IMG/VR virus record: IMGVR_UViG_3300043410_001471
Span: 124,001 to 188,000 of that record
DNA length: 64,000 nt
Direction: 5' to 3' (one strand)
A model generated the notes under the pieces. That model was not told the DNA's origin, searched no databases, and was given only the letters and a program-made list of their open reading frames with translations. A program made the translations under genes and the position numbers. Positions 760 to 6,808 of this stretch are shown here, piece by piece (the stretch's first letter is position 1; every line of letters starts with the position of its first letter).

Positions 760-1302
760 ATGCCAGCAGTATCAAAAGCACAACAACGATTTATGGGCAT
801 GGTTCATGCAGCTGATAAAGGAGAAACTCCTGCATCACCTGAAGTAGCAAAAGTAGCAGCTTCTATGGATGATAAAGATGCTAAAGATTTTGCATCAACA
901 TCTCATAAAGGATTGCCTGATAAAATCAAAGAATTTATAGTAAGAGAAGCTAGAGGTGTTAAATCAATCCAAAATGATTATATGAAAACAGTTAATGCTA
1001 TTGCACAAACTTTGGAATCATATAAGCAGGCTAAAGGAACTTCAAATGAAAAGAAATTTGTTGAAAGATTGAAACAACTACAAACTTTAAAAAAGAAATT
1101 TGCTAAAGAATTGGATGATAAGGTTAGTGGATTGTATAAAGATGTTGAGTTAAAAGCCGATGTGGATGAAATGAACACAAGTGGTGCAGCTGGAGAATAC
1201 AATACTCCATTTGCATTTGGTAAAAAAGAAGATGAGAAATCCAAAGGTAAAAGACAAGCAGATTTGACTGGATATTCGGTAGTTAAGGAAATTAAAAAAT
1301 AA
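760..1302 (+). CDS. Hypothetical head-module protein with DUF3008-like N-terminus
   Basis: N-terminal MPAVSKAQQRFMGMVHA...KDAKDFASTSHKGLP resembles DUF3008; contains (I/L/V)xE putative maturation sites. Confidence 0.6.
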   Translation: MPAVSKAQQRFMGMVHAADKGETPASPEVAKVAASMDDKDAKDFASTSHKGLPDKIKEFIVREARGVKSIQNDYMKTVNAIAQTLESYKQAKGTSNEKKFVERLKQLQTLKKKFAKELDDKVSGLYKDVELKADVDEMNTSGAAGEYNTPFAFGKKEDEKSKGKRQADLTGYSVVKEIKK

Positions 1303-1333: not shown

Positions 1334-1648
1334 ATGAAATTACATCAATTAAGAGAATTTGTTAAGCAAGTTGTAAAAGAAGAGCAAGATTATCAGCAAT
1401 TATTCAAACATATGTTGGATAAGACTGGTAAAGATATCAACTCTATGAGTGATGAAGATAAAAAGAAATTCTTCAGTGCCGTAGATACTGCTTACAAAGC
1501 AAAATCGGAGGGTAGATTAAGAGGGTATAACGAAGCTGAATTAACTGCTGGACAAAAGAAAATTGATGTGGATAATGATGGTGAGATTGAAGGTTCGGAT
1601 TTAGCAGCATTGAGAGCCAAAAATGAAGGGGCTCAAAAAAAAAAGTAA
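1334..1648 (+). CDS. Hypothetical head/internal protein; possible N-terminal half of a -1 frameshift fusion
   Basis: Preceded by TATTTATA; ends in GCT CAA AAA AAA AAG TAA; EF-hand-like DVDNDGEIEGSD segment. Confidence 0.7.
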   Translation: MKLHQLREFVKQVVKEEQDYQQLFKHMLDKTGKDINSMSDEDKKKFFSAVDTAYKAKSEGRLRGYNEAELTAGQKKIDVDNDGEIEGSDLAALRAKNEGAQKKK

Positions 1649-1692
1649 ATGAAAATTTAGCAATTGATATAGTAGCTACATTAGGTACTATT

Positions 1693-2061
1693 ATGGTTGC
1701 TAAAATTATATTTTATTATTTAGTGGATTTGGCAATTAAAGGAATGAAATATTTCCAAGGAAAGTCGGAACACAAAAAAGAAGTTAAAAAGATTTTAGAT
1801 TATATATCGGATGATACAAAAGTAATATCAGATATAGCTAAAATGGTAGACCCGAAAAAAGGAATTGATAACACAACGGCTGATAAAATTGTAAATTTAC
1901 CAAGAGTAAAAACTCAAATAATAAAAGTGAGTGATTCTACAAATGGTGAATTGAGTGAAACCGAATTAGAAAATGAATTAAAGACAATTATAATTAAGTC
2001 TTGGAACGATTCATCGATAATTGATAACGCAGTTGAAAAGGTAAAAAAAGATATAAAATAA
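1693..2061 (+). CDS. Hypothetical protein with hydrophobic N-terminal segment; frame is open upstream to 1627
   Basis: Frame 1 reads KKKVNENLAIDIVATLGTIMVAKIIFYYL..., so it is probably reached by frameshift from 1334..1648. Confidence 0.65.
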   Translation: MVAKIIFYYLVDLAIKGMKYFQGKSEHKKEVKKILDYISDDTKVISDIAKMVDPKKGIDNTTADKIVNLPRVKTQIIKVSDSTNGELSETELENELKTIIIKSWNDSSIIDNAVEKVKKDIK

Positions 2062-2062
2062 G

Positions 2063-2653
2063 ATGAGTAAAGGATTATTGATAGAAACCCATTTATTTGA
2101 AGCCAAACTTGTAGAACAAGATAATGGTACTTATTTAGTTAAGGGTATCCTACAAAGAGCAGGAGCTGCAAACCAAAATGGTAGAAGATATCCAAAAGAA
2201 ATCTTAATGAGAGAGTGTGAGAAATACCAACAACTTATTAAAGAAAGAAGAGCATTGGGTGAATTAGACCATCCGGATTCTCCAGTTATCAACTTAAAAA
2301 ATGTATCTCATAATATCAGAGAAATTTATTGGGAAGGTGATGATGTTTGTGGTGTAGTAGAAATTCTTTCAACTCCATCTGGTAATATCCTTAGAGAATT
2401 ATTAAAGAACAATATTCGTTTAGGTATCTCTTCAAGAGGTTTAGGTTCAGTAAAAGAATTGAGAGATGGAACTGTAATGGTTCAGGAAGATTTTGAATTG
2501 GTAGGTTGGGATTTTGTATCAAACCCATCAACGCATGGAGCATTTATGGCACCAATGAACGAATCTAAACAATGGGCAAAAATAGCAGAAGAATGTGGAA
2601 AGTTCTGCAAAGCACAAGATTTAATGAGAGAAATTATAATTGAATTAAACTAA
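2063..2653 (+). CDS. Prohead core protein protease (T4 gp21-like)
   Basis: Motifs NQNGRRYP, ALGELDHP, GISSRGLGS and DFVSNPS are characteristic of gp21-type prohead proteases. Confidence 0.92.
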   Translation: MSKGLLIETHLFEAKLVEQDNGTYLVKGILQRAGAANQNGRRYPKEILMRECEKYQQLIKERRALGELDHPDSPVINLKNVSHNIREIYWEGDDVCGVVEILSTPSGNILRELLKNNIRLGISSRGLGSVKELRDGTVMVQEDFELVGWDFVSNPSTHGAFMAPMNESKQWAKIAEECGKFCKAQDLMREIIIELN

Positions 2654-2658
2654 AACAT

Positions 2659-2913
2659 ATGGCAAAGTTAGTAAATCTAATACCAAAAAATAACATTGTA
2701 GTTAAAGAATCTTTAGATGATATGGATACAACATTACCATCTCAAGTAGAAAGATTTTTAGACAAAGCAGTAAATGCAATAAAAGGATATAATTTAACAA
2801 AGAAAAAAGAACAATTAGTAATTGCTAAGATTATAGATGCATTGAATTTAGATAAACAACAACTAATGACTGCTATTCAAAAAATTAAGAAAAACGATAT
2901 TTTAAAAAAATAA
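2659..2913 (+). CDS. Hypothetical head-module protein
   Basis: Tightly packed ORF; N-terminal leader ending VVKE. Confidence 0.65.
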   Translation: MAKLVNLIPKNNIVVKESLDDMDTTLPSQVERFLDKAVNAIKGYNLTKKKEQLVIAKIIDALNLDKQQLMTAIQKIKKNDILKK

Positions 2914-2914
2914 T

Positions 2915-3352
2915 ATGATACGTCTAAAAGATTTATTAAGTGAAGCTGAAGAACTTCAACAACTTCCAACGGAATTAAAAAGACATTTCTTAGAAATCAT
3001 TTCTACATATGGACAACATAGAGAGGGAATGGCTAGAAAATCGGATATCAGACAGGTTGCGGAAACTTTGGGTGGAATCGCAGATGCAGCGCAAGAATAT
3101 ACTTTAAGAGAAGGTGGTGATTGGTTTGACAGAGTTACGATTAAGCGTAATATGGGTGAACTTAAAAAATTACAAGCTGCATTTGAAAAAGAAGCAGTTG
3201 AAGCAAAAGCACAAGAACAAAGATTAGAATCATTATATGAAGATATGGGGCATGTGTTAGGAAGATATTTTGAAATAGCAGATGTATCTGAAGATGTAAT
3301 GAAGCAAAGATTAGGATTACAAGAATGTAAAACTTGCAAAAAATTAAAATAA
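2915..3352 (+). CDS. Hypothetical head-module protein (helical)
   Basis: Leader MIRLKDLLSE; coiled-coil-like; abuts both neighbours. Confidence 0.7.
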   Translation: MIRLKDLLSEAEELQQLPTELKRHFLEIISTYGQHREGMARKSDIRQVAETLGGIADAAQEYTLREGGDWFDRVTIKRNMGELKKLQAAFEKEAVEAKAQEQRLESLYEDMGHVLGRYFEIADVSEDVMKQRLGLQECKTCKKLK

Positions 3353-3724
3353 ATGGAAGAATTAGCATCGTTATTATTACAAAGTAGAACTCAATCACAT
3401 TCATTTCATTTAGGAGTTAGGGGAGTTGGAGCACACTCTGCTCATTTGGCATTAGGTGATTACTATAATTCCATTGGTGATTTAATTGATGGATTGGTTG
3501 AAACATATCAAGGTAAAGAAGGATTGATTCAAATTTCAGGTATTGGAACATTGGATAAAAATAATGATATTAAAAACATTATTAAATATTTCGAAACACT
3601 TTGTGGTATGGTAGCTAGACTAAGACAGAATCCAAAATTACAAGATAGTTGGATTCAAAATGATATCGATACAGTTGTATCTTTATTATATAGAACAAAA
3701 TATAAGTTGGTAAATCACCAATAA
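3353..3724 (+). CDS. Ferritin/Dps-like four-helix protein (DUF5856-like)
   Basis: H19-x11-H31-x14-D46-x3-E50 matches Dps ferroxidase-site spacing. Confidence 0.65.
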   Translation: MEELASLLLQSRTQSHSFHLGVRGVGAHSAHLALGDYYNSIGDLIDGLVETYQGKEGLIQISGIGTLDKNNDIKNIIKYFETLCGMVARLRQNPKLQDSWIQNDIDTVVSLLYRTKYKLVNHQ

Positions 3725-3942: not shown

Positions 3943-5166
3943 ATGGCAAATTCAAAATTATTGAAAGAAGCAATCGCTGATGCCAAAGCCGTTAAAGAAA
4001 CTGCTTTAGCAAACGCAAAGTTAGCTCTTGAAGAAGCATTTACACCAAGACTTCAATCTATCTTATCTCAAAAGATGAGAGCAGAAGCTGAAGAGCAGGA
4101 AGATGATGTTGAACAAGTAGCTGAAGAGTTAGATTCAGATGGTATCGGTTCTAAAGTAGAAGCTGGATACGCTGAAACTCCTGGTGCAACTCCAACTTTA
4201 GATGCAGACACTGATTTATCAGTAGGTGTAGCTAAGGATGCAGGAAAGCCAGAACAAGCTGGTACTGACTACACTAAAGTAGCAGATATCAACGAAGAAG
4301 AAGAAAATCCTTTCGCTGACCAAGAAGGTGACAAAGATGCAGAAATTGCAGAATTGAAAGCTAGATTAGCAGAATTAGAAGGAGAAGATTCTGAAGAAAA
4401 CCCAATGGCTGGTATGGATATGGGAACTGAAGAAGAAGACCCATTTGCAGCAGCTGGTGATGATATGGGTTCTATGGACATGGGTTCTGATGAAGAATCA
4501 GAAGATGATATGGACTTAGAAGCAATCATCAGAGAATTAGAAGCATCAATCAATGGTGATGAAGAAGGCGCTGAAGAAGCTCCAGAAGAAGAAAATCCAT
4601 TCGCAGCTAACGAAAATTTAGCAGATGGTTCTGAAGCTGGTACTGATAAAGGCGAAGACCCTAAGGTTGTTGTAACTAACGAAGAAGAAGAAAAAGAAGA
4701 TGACAAAGTTATCGACTTAGAAGAAATTCTTCGTGAAATGCAAGATGATATGGGTGGTGAAGAAGCAGAAGATGATTCAGCTACAAAAGCAGAATTAAAT
4801 GAAGCTTACAAAACTATCAAATCATTACAAAAAACTATTAACGAAGTAAACTTATTAAACGCTAAGTTATTATTCGCTAATAAATTATTCAGAGCACACA
4901 ACATGACTAACGAACAAAAAGTGAAAGTGATTGAAACTTTGGATAGAACAAAATCAGTTAGAGAAGTTAAATTGGTTTACTCTACATTAGCAGAGAATTT
5001 CAAATATACGACATCTTCTAACAAAACAGCTAAGAAATCAATTTCTGAAGGTATTGCTTCTAAAGCAGTTAAATCAACTGCACCAAAAGCAGCAGCTAAG
5101 CAAGTAATTGCAGAATCTGCACAAATTTCTGACAGATTTAAGAAATTAGCAGGTATTATTAAATAA
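3943..5166 (+). CDS. Prohead scaffolding/core protein (gp22-like)
   Basis: Very acidic, coiled-coil C-terminus (LNEVNLLNAKLLF), located between the protease and the major capsid gene. Confidence 0.85.
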   Translation: MANSKLLKEAIADAKAVKETALANAKLALEEAFTPRLQSILSQKMRAEAEEQEDDVEQVAEELDSDGIGSKVEAGYAETPGATPTLDADTDLSVGVAKDAGKPEQAGTDYTKVADINEEEENPFADQEGDKDAEIAELKARLAELEGEDSEENPMAGMDMGTEEEDPFAAAGDDMGSMDMGSDEESEDDMDLEAIIRELEASINGDEEGAEEAPEEENPFAANENLADGSEAGTDKGEDPKVVVTNEEEEKEDDKVIDLEEILREMQDDMGGEEAEDDSATKAELNEAYKTIKSLQKTINEVNLLNAKLLFANKLFRAHNMTNEQKVKVIETLDRTKSVREVKLVYSTLAENFKYTTSSNKTAKKSISEGIASKAVKSTAPKAAAKQVIAESAQISDRFKKLAGIIK

Positions 5167-5197: not shown

Positions 5198-6808
5198 ATG
5201 GACTTAAAAAAATTAATGAACGGCGCTAACCCACAAAGCATTATGCTTGAGCAAACTAGAGGTTTGAAAGCAAAGTGGGAAAAAACTGGATTGTTAGAGA
5301 ACGCAGGTTCTGAAACATCTAAGCATGGTATGGCAGTAATGTTAGAAAACCAAGCTAAACAATTATTGGATGAGGCTACAAGAACAGGTACTTCTTCAGG
5401 TTCTGAAGAGTGGGCTGGTGTTGCGTTACCTTTAGTAAGAAGAATCTTCGGTTCTATCGCTTCTAAAGAGTTCGTTTCAGTACAACCTATGAACTTACCT
5501 TCAGGTCTTATTTTCTACATGGACTTCAAATATGGTTCAAACCCAGCTGGTAATCCAAACTTCACAGGTTCATCTTTATTTGGTGATGGTGGAACTTTTG
5601 GTAAAGATTCTCAATCTCCAGCAGGAAACAAATTAGGTTCTACTCAAGCTACAACAGGTGGTTTGTATGGAGCTGGTAGATTCGGATATACAATCAATAA
5701 CGCTACTGCTGCACAAGCTGCAACTGTTGCTTCAGCATCTTTAGCAGATATCGATTGGGATTTATCTGACGCTACTGTTTCTGCATCTTATGCAGCTAAC
5801 ACATTGAAGAAAGTAACTGTGGCTTTACCATCAGATGCTGACTTCCAAGGTGTAAGAGCATTCGAATTAACTTTATTATCAGGTTCTTCAACTTTCTTCC
5901 CTCAATACACTACTAAGAATGGTTCTAACGTGGAATTCGTTGCAACTGTGACTGGTACAGGTTCAGCAGGTGCAAATGGTTCATCTTTAGCATACCATGT
6001 ACAACCTACTGATATCTCTCGTGGAGATTTCGAAGATAGAGGAGCTGATTTAGCGATTCCTGAAATCGAATTAGAATTGAAATCTGAGCCTATCGTGGCT
6101 AAGACTCGTAAGTTGAAAGCAATCTGGACTCCAGAATTAGCGCAAGACTTAAATGCATACCACTCTGTTGATGCAGAAGCGGAATTAACACAAATGTTAA
6201 GTGAGTACATCTCTTTAGAAATCGACTTAGAAATCTTAGAAATGTTACAACAAAACGCTTTCACAACTGATTACTGGTCTGCAAAAGTTGGATACGATTG
6301 GAATGGTGCAGGTTTCTCTATTGATTCAGACGCTGCAGCAGCATCTGCTTACACTAAGAGCACTTGGTATCAAACTTTAGGTATCAAATTACAAAAGGTA
6401 TCTAACAAGATTCACCAATTAACAATGAGAGGTGGAGCTAACTTCTTAGTAGTTTCTCCAAATGTAGCAACTATCTTAGAATCTATGAATGGTTTCTCTG
6501 CAAATCCTGGTAAAGATGCTTTACAATTTGCTGCAGGTGTAACTAACATTGGTTCTATCTCAAATAGATACGATGTTTACAAAAACCCTTACATGACTGA
6601 GAATGTAATCTTATTAGGTTTCAAAGGTTCTAACTTCTTCGAAACAGGAGCAGTTTACGCACCATATGTACCATTGATTATGACTCCATTAGTTTATGAC
6701 CCAACTAACTTCACTCCAAGAAGAGGTGTTATGACTAGATACGCTAAGAAAATCGTAAGACCAGAATTTTACGGTAAGATTATCGTTGATGGTTTAAACA
6801 CTCTTTAA
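5198..6808 (+). CDS. Major capsid protein (T4 gp23-like)
   Basis: Motifs VSVQPMNLPSGLIFY, AKTRKLKAIWTPELAQDLNAYH, EIDLEIL, YAPYVPL and RRGVMTRYA. Confidence 0.96.
   Translation: MDLKKLMNGANPQSIMLEQTRGLKAKWEKTGLLENAGSETSKHGMAVMLENQAKQLLDEATRTGTSSGSEEWAGVALPLVRRIFGSIASKEFVSVQPMNLPSGLIFYMDFKYGSNPAGNPNFTGSSLFGDGGTFGKDSQSPAGNKLGSTQATTGGLYGAGRFGYTINNATAAQAATVASASLADIDWDLSDATVSASYAANTLKKVTVALPSDADFQGVRAFELTLLSGSSTFFPQYTTKNGSNVEFVATVTGTGSAGANGSSLAYHVQPTDISRGDFEDRGADLAIPEIELELKSEPIVAKTRKLKAIWTPELAQDLNAYHSVDAEAELTQMLSEYISLEIDLEILEMLQQNAFTTDYWSAKVGYDWNGAGFSIDSDAAAASAYTKSTWYQTLGIKLQKVSNKIHQLTMRGGANFLVVSPNVATILESMNGFSANPGKDALQFAAGVTNIGSISNRYDVYKNPYMTENVILLGFKGSNFFETGAVYAPYVPLIMTPLVYDPTNFTPRRGVMTRYAKKIVRPEFYGKIIVDGLNTL

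What the first reader, a model, noticed from the sequence alone, without database searches (positions are those of the whole stretch)
1625..1707. Candidate -1 programmed frameshift (A AAA AAG + stop + long hairpin) in the head module
Seen: ORF 1334..1648 ends CAA AAA AAA AAG TAA, with the heptamer A_AAA_AAG at 1639-1645 inside an A10 run. About 8-10 nt downstream lies a long imperfect hairpin: TTTAGCAAT 1656-1664 pairs with GTTGCTAAA 1696-1704, ATAGTA 1669-1674 pairs with TACTAT 1686-1691, and the apex is CTA-cat-TAG. The -1 frame continues KKVNENLAIDIVATLGTIMVAKIIFYYL... into ORF 1693..2061. This restores a VNE maturation-type site and a complete hydrophobic helix that the Met1693 start would cut in half. 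Known: A AAA AAG with a 3' stem-loop is the dnaX/IS-type bacterial -1 signal. Inference: two products (104 aa and about 240 aa) of an internal or membrane-inserting head protein; frameshifts in this position are not the usual capsid or tail-chaperone case.
Basis: partly seen in the sequence, partly recalled or inferred. Interest (0 to 1): 0.72.

Follow-up and report, generated by a model that had tools for sequence, protein, structure and literature searches.

The report
Conserved -1 frameshift in phage head gene
In an uncultured freshwater T4-like phage, a run of ten A's, a stop codon and a conserved RNA hairpin let some ribosomes slip back one base, fusing a small head-core protein to a second protein that has no start codon of its own; this is a well-supported new example of a known decoding trick in an unusual place.

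Summary
ORF A (1334-1648) ends CAA AAA AAA AAG TAA. A 138-codon frame (B, 1645-2061) is open in the -1 frame, and a hairpin lies at 1647-1713.

Among 100 distinct junctions from related viral contigs:
- 65 keep B in the -1 frame behind A9-A12, with the zero-frame stop 0-4 nt after the run and no usable start codon. The window's Met1693 is ATG in 1 of 43 aligned relatives.
- 24 relatives lack B, and their longest A run near the end of A is 7 or fewer.
- One clade encodes A and B as a single in-frame protein at the same locus.
- Three variants give B its own ATG and a short leader.

The hairpin shows compensatory changes and is far more stable than synonymous recodings of the same peptide (median z -3.7). 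It is absent from the in-frame and own-start forms.

A [VIL]-x-E site, of the kind prohead proteases cut, is invariant at the junction.

Best reading: a programmed -1 ribosomal frameshift makes A (104 aa) and A-B (242 aa). This would load B into the prohead for later release by the protease. RNA polymerase slippage on the A-run may also contribute. Both the mechanism and B's function are untested. I rate it a new member of a known kind.

The parts
1334..1648 (+). ORF A, the zero-frame product (104 aa). It is a highly conserved small head-module protein with an N-terminal leader MKLHQLRE... and an invariant D-x-D-x-D-G-E-I-E loop. It ends QKKK-stop.
   Evidence: alignment A3 has mean column identity 84%; no Pfam or PHROG family.
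1626..1631 (+). Shine-Dalgarno-like AAGGGG, ending 7 nt before the heptamer. It is a possible 5' stimulator.
   Evidence: AGGGG or AGGAG stands at this position in 15 of 16 VV-type junctions and 13 of 48 VNE-type junctions. It also encodes N-E-G, so the evidence is weak.
1635..1644 (+). The A10 run. Relatives have A9 to A12.
   Evidence: It is one of only two runs of A10 or longer in the genome. The run length co-varies with the flanking bases so that the -1 relation is kept.
1639..1645 (+). Slippery heptamer A_AAA_AAG in the zero frame.
   Evidence: Of 65 frameshift-type junctions, 51 have A_AAA_AAG and 14 have A_AAA_AAA. The stop follows directly in 55 and after one further codon in 10.
1646..1648 (+). 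Zero-frame stop TAA immediately 3' of the heptamer. The +1 frame also stops, at TGA 1650-1652.
   Evidence: In all 65 frameshift-type junctions the stop lies 0-4 nt after the run.
1645..1653 (+). The first codons read after the shift, GTA AAT GAA = V-N-E. This is a candidate cleavage site for the prohead protease.
   Evidence: [VILM]-[NDST]-E is present at this place in every form: frameshift, in-frame and own-start. The Glu is invariant in alignment A4. Cleavage itself is inferred from what is known of S77 proteases.
1647..1713 (+). The 3' hairpin. The main stem pairs 1656-1665 with 1695-1704, the upper stem 1669-1674 with 1686-1691, and the apex 1676-1678 with 1682-1684. A weak outer extension starts at 1647.
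   Evidence: -18.6 kcal/mol, z -3.8. Covariation. Comparison with synonymous recodings. Absent from in-frame and own-start relatives.
1645..2061 (+). B, the -1 frame extension (138 codons plus stop). It has a long hydrophobic N-terminal helix and then a helical domain of unknown fold.
   Evidence: AlphaFold model has pLDDT 91. No structural match.
2063..2653 (+). Context: the prohead protease (Peptidase_S77, T4 gp21 type), immediately after B.
760..1302 (+). Context: the DUF3008 virion-type protein upstream of A.
   Evidence: The order DUF3008, A(-B), protease is the same in relatives.

Best explanation
This is a programmed -1 ribosomal frameshift cassette in the head module of an uncultured freshwater T4-like phage.

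Most ribosomes translating gene A stop at TAA 1646 and release the 104-aa protein A. A fraction slip back one base on A_AAA_AAG (1639-1645). Slippage would be favoured by the stop codon in the next position, by the hairpin whose main stem starts 10 nt downstream, and perhaps by the AAGGGG upstream. These ribosomes continue in the -1 frame to 2061 and make a 242-aa A-B fusion with the junction ...AQKKK-VNE-NLAIDIV....

Steps that are shown:
- The signals are present and conserved.
- The B frame is coding upstream of any start codon.
- The hairpin is selected at synonymous sites.
- The hairpin occurs only where a frameshift is needed.
- A-B exists as a natural single protein in relatives.

Steps that are inferred:
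- The fusion carries B into the prohead on the back of core protein A.
- The neighbouring S77 prohead protease then cuts after the invariant V-x-E and frees B. This is the same logic as Gag-Pol.
- RNA polymerase slippage on the A10 run probably adds some +1-A transcripts that give the same fusion.
For: 1. Conservation. Of 100 distinct junctions, 65 have B in the -1 frame behind A9-A12, with the zero-frame stop 0-4 nt after the run and no ATG/GTG/TTG before the V-x-E site. Run length and flanking bases change together (ctcA10g, gttA11g, gttA10gg, ctcA11, ggtA12g, tgtA9g), so the frame relation is preserved.

2. B is translated upstream of Met1693. Over those 17 codons the B frame has 0 stops in 43 sequences, against 142 and 74 in the other two frames. 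Second codon positions are the most conserved. The ATG of 1693 is ATA, ATC, ATT, TTA or CTC in 42 of 43 relatives.

3. Natural controls.
- The 24 relatives without B have at most A7 at the end of A.
- Eight 50%-identity clusters of 208-217 aa are in-frame short-A-B fusions. The two whose contigs were fetched lie at the same locus, between DUF3008 and the protease.
- Three variants give B its own ATG and the leader MIKLKSILIE.

4. Hairpin.
- 79% of cells are paired, against 39-58% when the partners are slid.
- 61 cells have changes on both sides, against 35.8 +/- 4 in shuffles (0 of 500 shuffles reach it). Examples are pair 28-75 (CG 25, UA 12) and pair 39-63 (AU 13, UA 13).
- Against synonymous recodings of the same peptide, the median z is -3.68 in the 65 frameshift forms. 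In control stretches further downstream it is -0.4 to -1.2.
- In natural in-frame forms z is -1.27 to +1.57, and in own-start forms -0.86 to -1.76. Mann-Whitney p = 9.5e-7, not corrected for phylogeny.
- A 3' hairpin cannot act on the polymerase while the run is being transcribed, so it points to the ribosome.

5. The genome encodes tRNA-Lys(UUU) and no tRNA-Lys(CUU).

6. On the protease tree the -1 state lies on both sides of the midpoint root. This suggests the arrangement is old and maintained.
Against: - No protein or RNA evidence exists. Only contigs were available, and no RNA contig crosses the junction of this strain.
- Every frameshift-type junction has at least 9 A's, never 7 or 8. 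Nine is the length at which bacterial RNA polymerase slips efficiently (PMC5009743), so transcription may do part or most of the work.
- The lysines are also conserved as protein in some in-frame forms. The A-run is therefore partly explained by coding in an AT-rich genome.
- The window's own hairpin is only modestly better than synonymous recodings (z -2.2 to -2.3, p about 0.03).
- Seven frameshift-type junctions have weak or no hairpins, among them L080 and L040.
- The main stem starts 10 nt after the heptamer, somewhat beyond the usual 5-9 nt.
- The host, its ribosomes and its tRNA modifications are unknown.
Confidence: 0.7

Rival explanations
1. Transcriptional slippage is the only mechanism. 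The host RNA polymerase stutters on the A10 template run, and the transcripts that carry one extra A are translated normally into A-B. On this view the hairpin has another role or none.
For: All 65 frameshift-type junctions have A9-A12 and none is shorter. Bacterial RNA polymerase slips efficiently on runs of 9 A or T, and this is used productively in Thermus dnaX and Shigella spa13 (PMC5009743). Both other frames stop within 2 codons of the run, so the remaining slippage products are harmless near-copies of A, as in Thermus dnaX.
Against: The conserved structure lies 3' of the run and tracks the need for a frameshift. Known RNA stimulators of slippage lie 5' of the site, in the nascent RNA (my knowledge of the Roseiflexus IS630 case; no paper read here gives the 5' position), and the 48 nt upstream show no consistent structure (median z -0.88). 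The zero-frame stop is kept within 0-4 nt of the run, which slippage does not require. In-frame relatives tolerate A10 and A12 runs without any hairpin.
Confidence: 0.17
2. B is an ordinary separate gene that initiates at Met1693 or at a non-canonical codon, and the A-run and hairpin are incidental.
For: Gene callers annotate B this way (122 aa in this genome). The database holds many B proteins with assorted N-termini.
Against: The first start codon in the B frame lies anywhere from +12 to +183 nt after the run and is not conserved. ATG1693 is unique to the window, at 1 of 43. The 16 codons upstream are conserved as protein, with no stops. ATG1693 sits inside the 3' half of the hairpin and has no Shine-Dalgarno sequence. 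Starting there would cut the predicted N-terminal helix.
Confidence: 0.05
3. The cause is a DNA-level change. Either a homopolymer assembly error hides a true in-frame fusion, or the A-run is a mutable switch that gives A10 and A11 subpopulations.
For: Two single-contig variants exist. L095 has A11 and is an in-frame 242-aa protein (P0003). L096 has A9.
Against: The -1 arrangement recurs in 65 distinct junctions from many samples and sequence contexts. Two assemblies from other studies keep A10. L095 still carries a strong hairpin (z -6.5), unlike the evolved in-frame forms, so it looks like a recent slip or an error in a frameshift-type locus.
Confidence: 0.05
4. The hairpin is a terminator, attenuator or RNA-stability element placed after gene A, and is not a frameshift stimulator.
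For: It is followed by a U-rich stretch, AUUAUAUUUUAUUAU.
Against: No terminator-like site is scored here. The stem is long, AU-rich and imperfect. The U-rich stretch encodes the conserved IIFYY, which in-frame forms without a hairpin also have. The protease, scaffold and capsid genes downstream need read-through.
Confidence: 0.03

Closest known systems
E. coli dnaX tau/gamma -1 frameshift cassette
   Same: The same heptamer A_AAA_AAG, a 3' stem-loop, and a Shine-Dalgarno-like element upstream. Both yield two products in a set ratio.
   Different: In dnaX the -1 frame stops at once and gives the shorter product. Here the zero frame stops at once and the -1 frame adds 138 residues. The main stem starts 10 nt after the site. 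The upstream element is present in only a minority of relatives. No sequence relation, and no Rfam match.
IS3/IS911-type OrfA-OrfAB frameshifting
   Same: A short upstream ORF and a downstream ORF without its own start are fused by a -1 shift on an A-rich heptamer with a 3' structure.
   Different: This is a virion-assembly gene pair, not a transposase. The overlap is minimal because the stop directly follows the site.
Frameshifts in phage structural genes: lambda G/GT, Lactobacillus phage A2 major head protein, T7/T3 10A/10B
   Same: A -1 shift near the 3' end of a virion or assembly gene gives a minor C-terminally extended form beside the major short form (PMC5009743, PMC5221750).
   Different: The gene family and place are different: the prohead-core position between a DUF3008 protein and the prohead protease of a T4-like phage. 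The extension is a complete folded protein with a protease-type site at the joint. Relatives alternate between frameshift, in-frame fusion, own start and absence.
Retroviral and totiviral Gag-Pol
   Same: The logic is the same. A frameshift fuses a low-copy cargo to an abundant assembly protein so that it is packaged, and a viral protease later separates them (PMC5009743).
   Different: This is a bacterial virus with unrelated proteins. Packaging and cleavage are inferred here, not shown.
T4 gp67/gp68 prohead core proteins and the capsid-targeting sequences of the internal proteins
   Same: The gene position is the same: 67, 68, 21 in T4 and A, B, protease here. Sizes are similar (gp68 141 aa, B 138 aa). 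There are short N-terminal leaders ending in hydrophobic-x-Glu, of the kind S77 proteases cut.
   Different: No detectable homology (hhalign probability under 1%). T4 genes 67 and 68 are separate genes with an overlapping TAATG.
Productive transcriptional slippage (Thermus dnaX at a run of 9, Shigella spa13)
   Same: A homopolymer of 9 or more, with stops close by in the other frames.
   Different: Here a conserved 3' hairpin and an adjacent stop point to the ribosome. No RNA data are available.

Membership tests
Bacterial -1 programmed ribosomal frameshift cassette (dnaX/IS type) | Slippery heptamer X_XXY_YYZ in the zero frame | tested here: met
   A_AAA_AAG at 1639-1645. All 65 frameshift-type relatives have A_AAA_AAG or A_AAA_AAA in register.
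Bacterial -1 programmed ribosomal frameshift cassette (dnaX/IS type) | A -1 ORF that overlaps the site, is conserved as coding sequence and has no initiation codon of its own | tested here: met
   The B frame is open from 1627 and has 0 stops where the other frames have 142 and 74. The position of the first start codon is variable, and ATG1693 is found in 1 of 43.
Bacterial -1 programmed ribosomal frameshift cassette (dnaX/IS type) | Stimulatory RNA structure a few nucleotides 3' of the site | tested here: met
   Hairpin 1647-1713. It shows covariation, is more stable than synonymous recodings, and is absent where no shift is needed. That it actually stimulates the shift has not been measured.
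Bacterial -1 programmed ribosomal frameshift cassette (dnaX/IS type) | Shine-Dalgarno-like element 5' of the site (optional) | tested here: inconclusive
   AAGGGG at 1626-1631. It is present in 28 of 64 frameshift-type junctions and also encodes N-E-G.
Bacterial -1 programmed ribosomal frameshift cassette (dnaX/IS type) | A trans-frame protein is actually made by ribosomes on unedited mRNA | not testable with these tools
   No proteomic data, and no RNA reads over the junction. Natural in-frame homologues show only that the fused protein is viable.
Productive transcriptional slippage site | Homopolymer of about 9 or more A or T | tested here: met
   A10 here and A9-A12 in all 65 relatives.
Productive transcriptional slippage site | A heterogeneous mRNA population at the run | not testable with these tools
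   The only RNA-library material was contigs of relatives, and none crosses this junction.
Phage tail assembly chaperone G/GT frameshift | Located between the tail tube gene and the tape measure gene | tested here: not met
   The site lies between a DUF3008 protein and the S77 prohead protease, upstream of the scaffold-like and gp23 capsid genes.
T4 gp67/gp68 prohead core proteins | Sequence homology to gp67 or gp68 | tested here: not met
   hhalign of A3 against gp67 and of A1 against gp68 gives probability under 1%. Only the gene position corresponds.
Substrates of S77 (T4 gp21-type) prohead protease | Cleavage after Glu in a hydrophobic-x-Glu motif | tested here: inconclusive
   The motif [VILM]-[NDST]-E is invariant at the junction in all forms. 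Cleavage itself cannot be tested here.

The most novel reading that the evidence does not exclude
A T4-like phage lineage uses a Gag-Pol-like strategy. A tuned -1 frameshift fuses a low-copy hydrophobic cargo protein (B) to an abundant prohead-core protein (A), so that B is packaged. The prohead protease then releases it at an invariant V-x-E joint. Sister lineages solve the same problem in other ways: by an in-frame fusion, by giving B its own targeting-type leader, or by dropping B. The RNA hairpin is gained and lost in step with the need for a frameshift, and there may be a trade-off between the 5' Shine-Dalgarno-like stimulator and the 3' hairpin.
Probability: 0.4. Interest if true: 0.75.

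Novelty: new member of a known kind. Interest (0 to 1): 0.62.

Why it matters
Known programmed frameshifts in tailed phages lie in tail-chaperone, capsid and tail genes. I found no report of one in the prohead-core module of T4-like phages.

This case comes with an unusually complete set of natural controls within one family: frameshift, in-frame, own-start and absent forms. These make it a good system for studying how recoding signals arise and decay, and how the stoichiometry of internal head proteins is set.

In practice, gene callers truncate B at arbitrary internal codons in hundreds of metagenomic contigs, so the annotation should be corrected. If the packaging model holds, the A leader, slip site and V-x-E joint together form a natural cassette for loading a protein into a capsid at a set dose.

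Tried and rejected
- RNAalifold on the 43-sequence alignment found only the outer pairs. Subclades use two registers of the lower stem (an Ala or a Gly codon at one position). I therefore tested explicit structures instead.
- Rfam at permissive thresholds gave nothing near any gathering score.
- B has no homologue among 50,697 deposited phage genomes, and A has only weak partial hits.
- Pfam and PHROGs give nothing for A or B.
- The high-confidence B model has no match in PDB, the AlphaFold DB clusters or the ESM Atlas. BFVD holds only one uncharacterised relative.
- The A model is of low confidence (pLDDT 68), so I did not search with it.
- T4 gp67 and gp68 are not homologues.
- Sequencing runs were available only as assembled contigs. 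Neither read-level A-run heterogeneity nor RNA slippage could be measured.
- The terminator scan was negative.
- The 48 nt upstream show no consistent structure.
- Re-initiation at the ATG directly after the stop (1649-1651) is rejected. That ATG is in the A frame and is followed by a stop two codons later.
- The fused protein was not folded or searched by reference.

Full report
**What is there.**

The window is part of a 245-kb viral record with terminal repeats, taken from a freshwater metagenome. The region is a T4-type head module:
- a DUF3008 protein (760-1302);
- ORF A (1334-1648);
- ORF B;
- an S77 prohead protease (2063-2653);
- small ORFs;
- an acidic scaffold-like protein (3943-5166);
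- a gp23-type major capsid protein (5198-6808).

ORF A ends CAA AAA AAA AAG TAA. The A10 run is at 1635-1644, the heptamer A_AAA_AAG at 1639-1645 and the stop at 1646-1648. The -1 frame is open from 1627 to 2061. After the run it reads V-N-E-N-L-A-I-D-I-V..., and its first ATG/GTG/TTG is at 1693.

The genome has only two runs of A10 or longer, and long A-runs are visibly depleted. Contigs from two other studies carry the same A10 without gaps.

**Comparative test.**

Four scans of viral contigs plus protein-database look-ups gave 236 loci. After removing duplicates there are 100 distinct junctions.

*Frameshift-type junctions (65).*
- B lies in the -1 frame behind a run of A9-A12.
- The zero-frame stop is 0-4 nt after the run.
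- There is no start codon in the B frame before the conserved V-x-E.
- Run length and flanking bases change together (ctcA10g-TAA, gttA11g-TAA, gttA10gg-TAA, ctcA11-TAA, ggtA12g-TAG, tgtA9g-aat-TAA). The frame relation survives although the sequence differs.
- The zero-frame reading always offers A_AAA_AAG (51) or A_AAA_AAA (14).

*Junctions without B (24).* A is followed directly by the protease gene. The longest A-run near the end of A is 7 or fewer. A twenty-fifth apparent case, L072, is a locus cut at the stop and carries A11.

*In-frame fusions.* Five junctions, forming one clade on the protease tree (support 100/97), encode a shortened A joined in frame to B. So do eight 50%-identity protein clusters of 208-217 aa from an exhaustive profile search. 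The two clusters whose contigs I fetched sit at the same locus, between DUF3008 and the protease.

*Own-start forms (3).* L029, L038 and L078 have a longer upstream protein. They give B its own ATG and the leader MIKLKSILIEVMKKKSVNE....

*Run-length variants.* Two single-contig variants differ by one A: L095 (A11, read as an in-frame 242-aa protein) and L096 (A9). L002 has an indel upstream of the junction.

**B is translated upstream of Met1693.**

Over the 17 codons between the run and the position of 1693, the B frame has no stop in 43 aligned sequences, while the other frames have 142 and 74. Second codon positions are by far the most conserved. The codon aligned with ATG1693 is ATG only in the window; elsewhere it is ATA, ATC, ATT, TTA, CTC, CTT or GTT. 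Gene callers accordingly give B a scatter of arbitrary N-termini. The ATG directly after the stop (1649-1651) is in the A frame and is followed by a stop two codons later.

**The hairpin is selected and tracks the frameshift.**

On the alignment of 43 VNE-type junctions, the majority structure behaves as follows:
- 79% of cells are paired, against 39-58% when the 3' partners are slid.
- 61 cells have changes on both sides, against 35.8 +/- 4 in shuffles (0 of 500 reach it).
- Clear compensatory pairs include 28-75 (CG 25, UA 12), 27-76 (UA 33, CG 6), 36-66 (UA 16, GC 6, AU 4) and 39-63 (AU 13, UA 13).
- Several of these link a synonymous Leu change (UUA to CUU) to a synonymous Lys change (AAA to AAG).

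I then recoded each peptide at random with the phage's own codon usage and compared stabilities.
- The native RNA is far more stable: median z is -3.68 over the 65 frameshift forms.
- Stretches 150 and 240 nt further downstream give medians of -0.4 to -1.2 in the two frameshift clades.
- The natural in-frame forms give z -1.27 to +1.57, and the own-start forms -0.86 to -1.76.
- Mann-Whitney p is 9.5e-7. This is not corrected for relatedness; the non-frameshift forms represent about five lineages.
- L095 keeps a strong hairpin (z -6.5). This marks it as a recent slip or an error in a frameshift-type locus, not an evolved fusion.

There are exceptions. Seven frameshift forms have weak or no hairpins, among them L080 and L040. 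Six of them belong to the VV-type clade, where 15 of 16 members carry AGGGG or AGGAG just upstream of the run, against 13 of 48 in the VNE-type clade. That hints at a trade-off between 5' and 3' stimulators, but it is confounded by phylogeny.

The window's own hairpin is among the weaker ones (z about -2.2 against synonymous recodings). No terminator-like site, no Rfam family and no consistent upstream structure were found.

**Mechanism.**

The heptamer, the adjacent stop and the selected 3' hairpin together form the classical bacterial -1 frameshift cassette, the dnaX/IS type. The genome also encodes tRNA-Lys(UUU) and no tRNA-Lys(CUU); this is the tRNA that makes A_AAA_AAG so slippery in E. 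coli (established knowledge).

RNA polymerase slippage cannot be excluded, and I expect it to contribute. Every frameshift-type junction has at least nine A's, and bacterial RNA polymerase slips efficiently at nine (PMC5009743). Both other frames stop within two codons, so the other slippage products would be harmless.

However, a structure 3' of the run cannot influence the polymerase while it transcribes the run. In-frame relatives keep A10 and A12 runs without any hairpin. Lys-Lys-Lys is also conserved as protein in some in-frame forms, which partly explains the run in a 32% GC genome.

My estimates are about 0.7 for a ribosomal frameshift as the main route and 0.17 for slippage alone. The remaining 0.13 is shared among a separate start for B, DNA-level causes and another role for the hairpin.

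**What it is for (inferred).**

A is very conserved (84% mean column identity). It has a short leader, MKLHQLRE, and an invariant D-x-D-x-D-G-E-I-E loop.

B is variable. It folds with high confidence (pLDDT 91) into a long hydrophobic N-terminal helix plus a helical domain. This fold has no match in PDB, the AlphaFold DB clusters or the ESM Atlas.

A and B occupy the position of T4 genes 67 and 68, before gene 21, but are not detectably homologous to them.

In T4 the core proteins and internal proteins are cut by gp21, and 10-20-residue N-terminal leaders target proteins into the prohead (PMC9958956, PMC5694885). S77-type proteases cut after Glu in x-X-E motifs (PMC5694885; L/I-x-E for T4 is from my own knowledge).

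Three observations fit a Gag-Pol-like scheme:
- the motif [VILM]-[NDST]-E is invariant at the A-B joint in all forms;
- when B is a separate gene it acquires a leader ending L-I-E;
- the slip module (KKK, stop, hairpin, B) can follow A proteins with different inserted C-terminal domains of 133-229 aa.

In that scheme the frameshift sets how many A molecules carry B into the prohead, and the protease then frees B. The copy numbers, the location and the function of B are unknown.

**Evolution.**

On a tree of the adjacent protease, which is highly conserved and so poorly resolved, the -1 state lies on both sides of the midpoint root. The in-frame forms are one nested clade. Forms without B need at least 5-7 changes. 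The own-start form L078 is sister to L080, the frameshift form that has lost its hairpin. The frameshift is therefore old and maintained, with repeated loss of B. Recombination between phages could blur this picture.

**Known or new.**

The mechanism is a known kind. Frameshifts in phage tail-chaperone, capsid and tail genes are well documented (PMC5009743, PMC5221750). I found no report of one in the prohead-core module of T4-like phages, and B has no relative in deposited phage genomes. I therefore rate it a new member of a known kind, with better natural controls than most predicted cases.

Noticed in passing
window 1334-1648 (residues 78-90 of A): A carries an invariant D-x-D-x-D-G-E-I-E-x-S-D-L loop, like an EF-hand or dockerin calcium-binding loop (weak Pfam Dockerin_1 hit, E 0.004). 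The short-A in-frame fusion lineage lacks this whole segment.
   Followed up: partly
L042 591-1109, L080 3001-3690, L029 2147-2749, L149/L150, L224: In some relatives, extra domains of 30-130 residues lie between the conserved core of A and the KKK-stop slip site. The slip module travels with B, not with the core of A.
   Followed up: partly
window 760-1302; L029 569-2098; L080 1280-2953: The upstream DUF3008 protein is 180 aa here but 509-557 aa in relatives. The additions are large, repetitive-looking C-terminal segments punctuated by S/V-x-N-E motifs.
   Followed up: no
window 2659-2913, 2915-3352, 3943-5166, 5198-6808: Neighbouring head-module ORFs start with short leaders that end in hydrophobic-x-Glu, for example MIRLKDLLSE and MANSKLLKE, and there are several such motifs in the capsid propeptide. 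This is consistent with processing by the S77 protease.
   Followed up: no
window 3353-3724; L155 6763-7475: A ferritin/Dps-like gene (DUF5856, PHROG 858) sits inside the head module. In a relative, a Ferritin-family gene is followed by a ribosomal protein S21 gene.
   Followed up: no
genome (G000) 235902-236275 and 239707-245317, outside the window: The phage genome encodes a tmRNA and 25 tRNAs. Most are in one cluster, which includes tRNA-Lys(UUU) but no tRNA-Lys(CUU).
   Followed up: partly
genome (G000) 116456-116465, outside the window: The only other A10 run in the genome lies in frame inside a very long ORF (about 1570 codons). No alternative frame is open around it.
   Followed up: partly
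L095 1157-1167; L096 148-156: Two single-contig variants differ by one A at the run. A11 gives an in-frame A-B protein (P0003, from a Logan assembly of one run). A9 puts an upstream ATG into the B frame. I could not tell whether these are sequencing errors, real DNA variants or, if the run is RNA, slippage products.
   Followed up: partly
junctions of the VV-type clade (e.g. L018, L027, L039, L049): The clade with weaker 3' hairpins almost always has AGGGG or AGGAG 5-9 nt upstream of the run. The clade with strong hairpins mostly lacks it. This may be a trade-off between stimulators, but it is confounded by phylogeny.
   Followed up: partly
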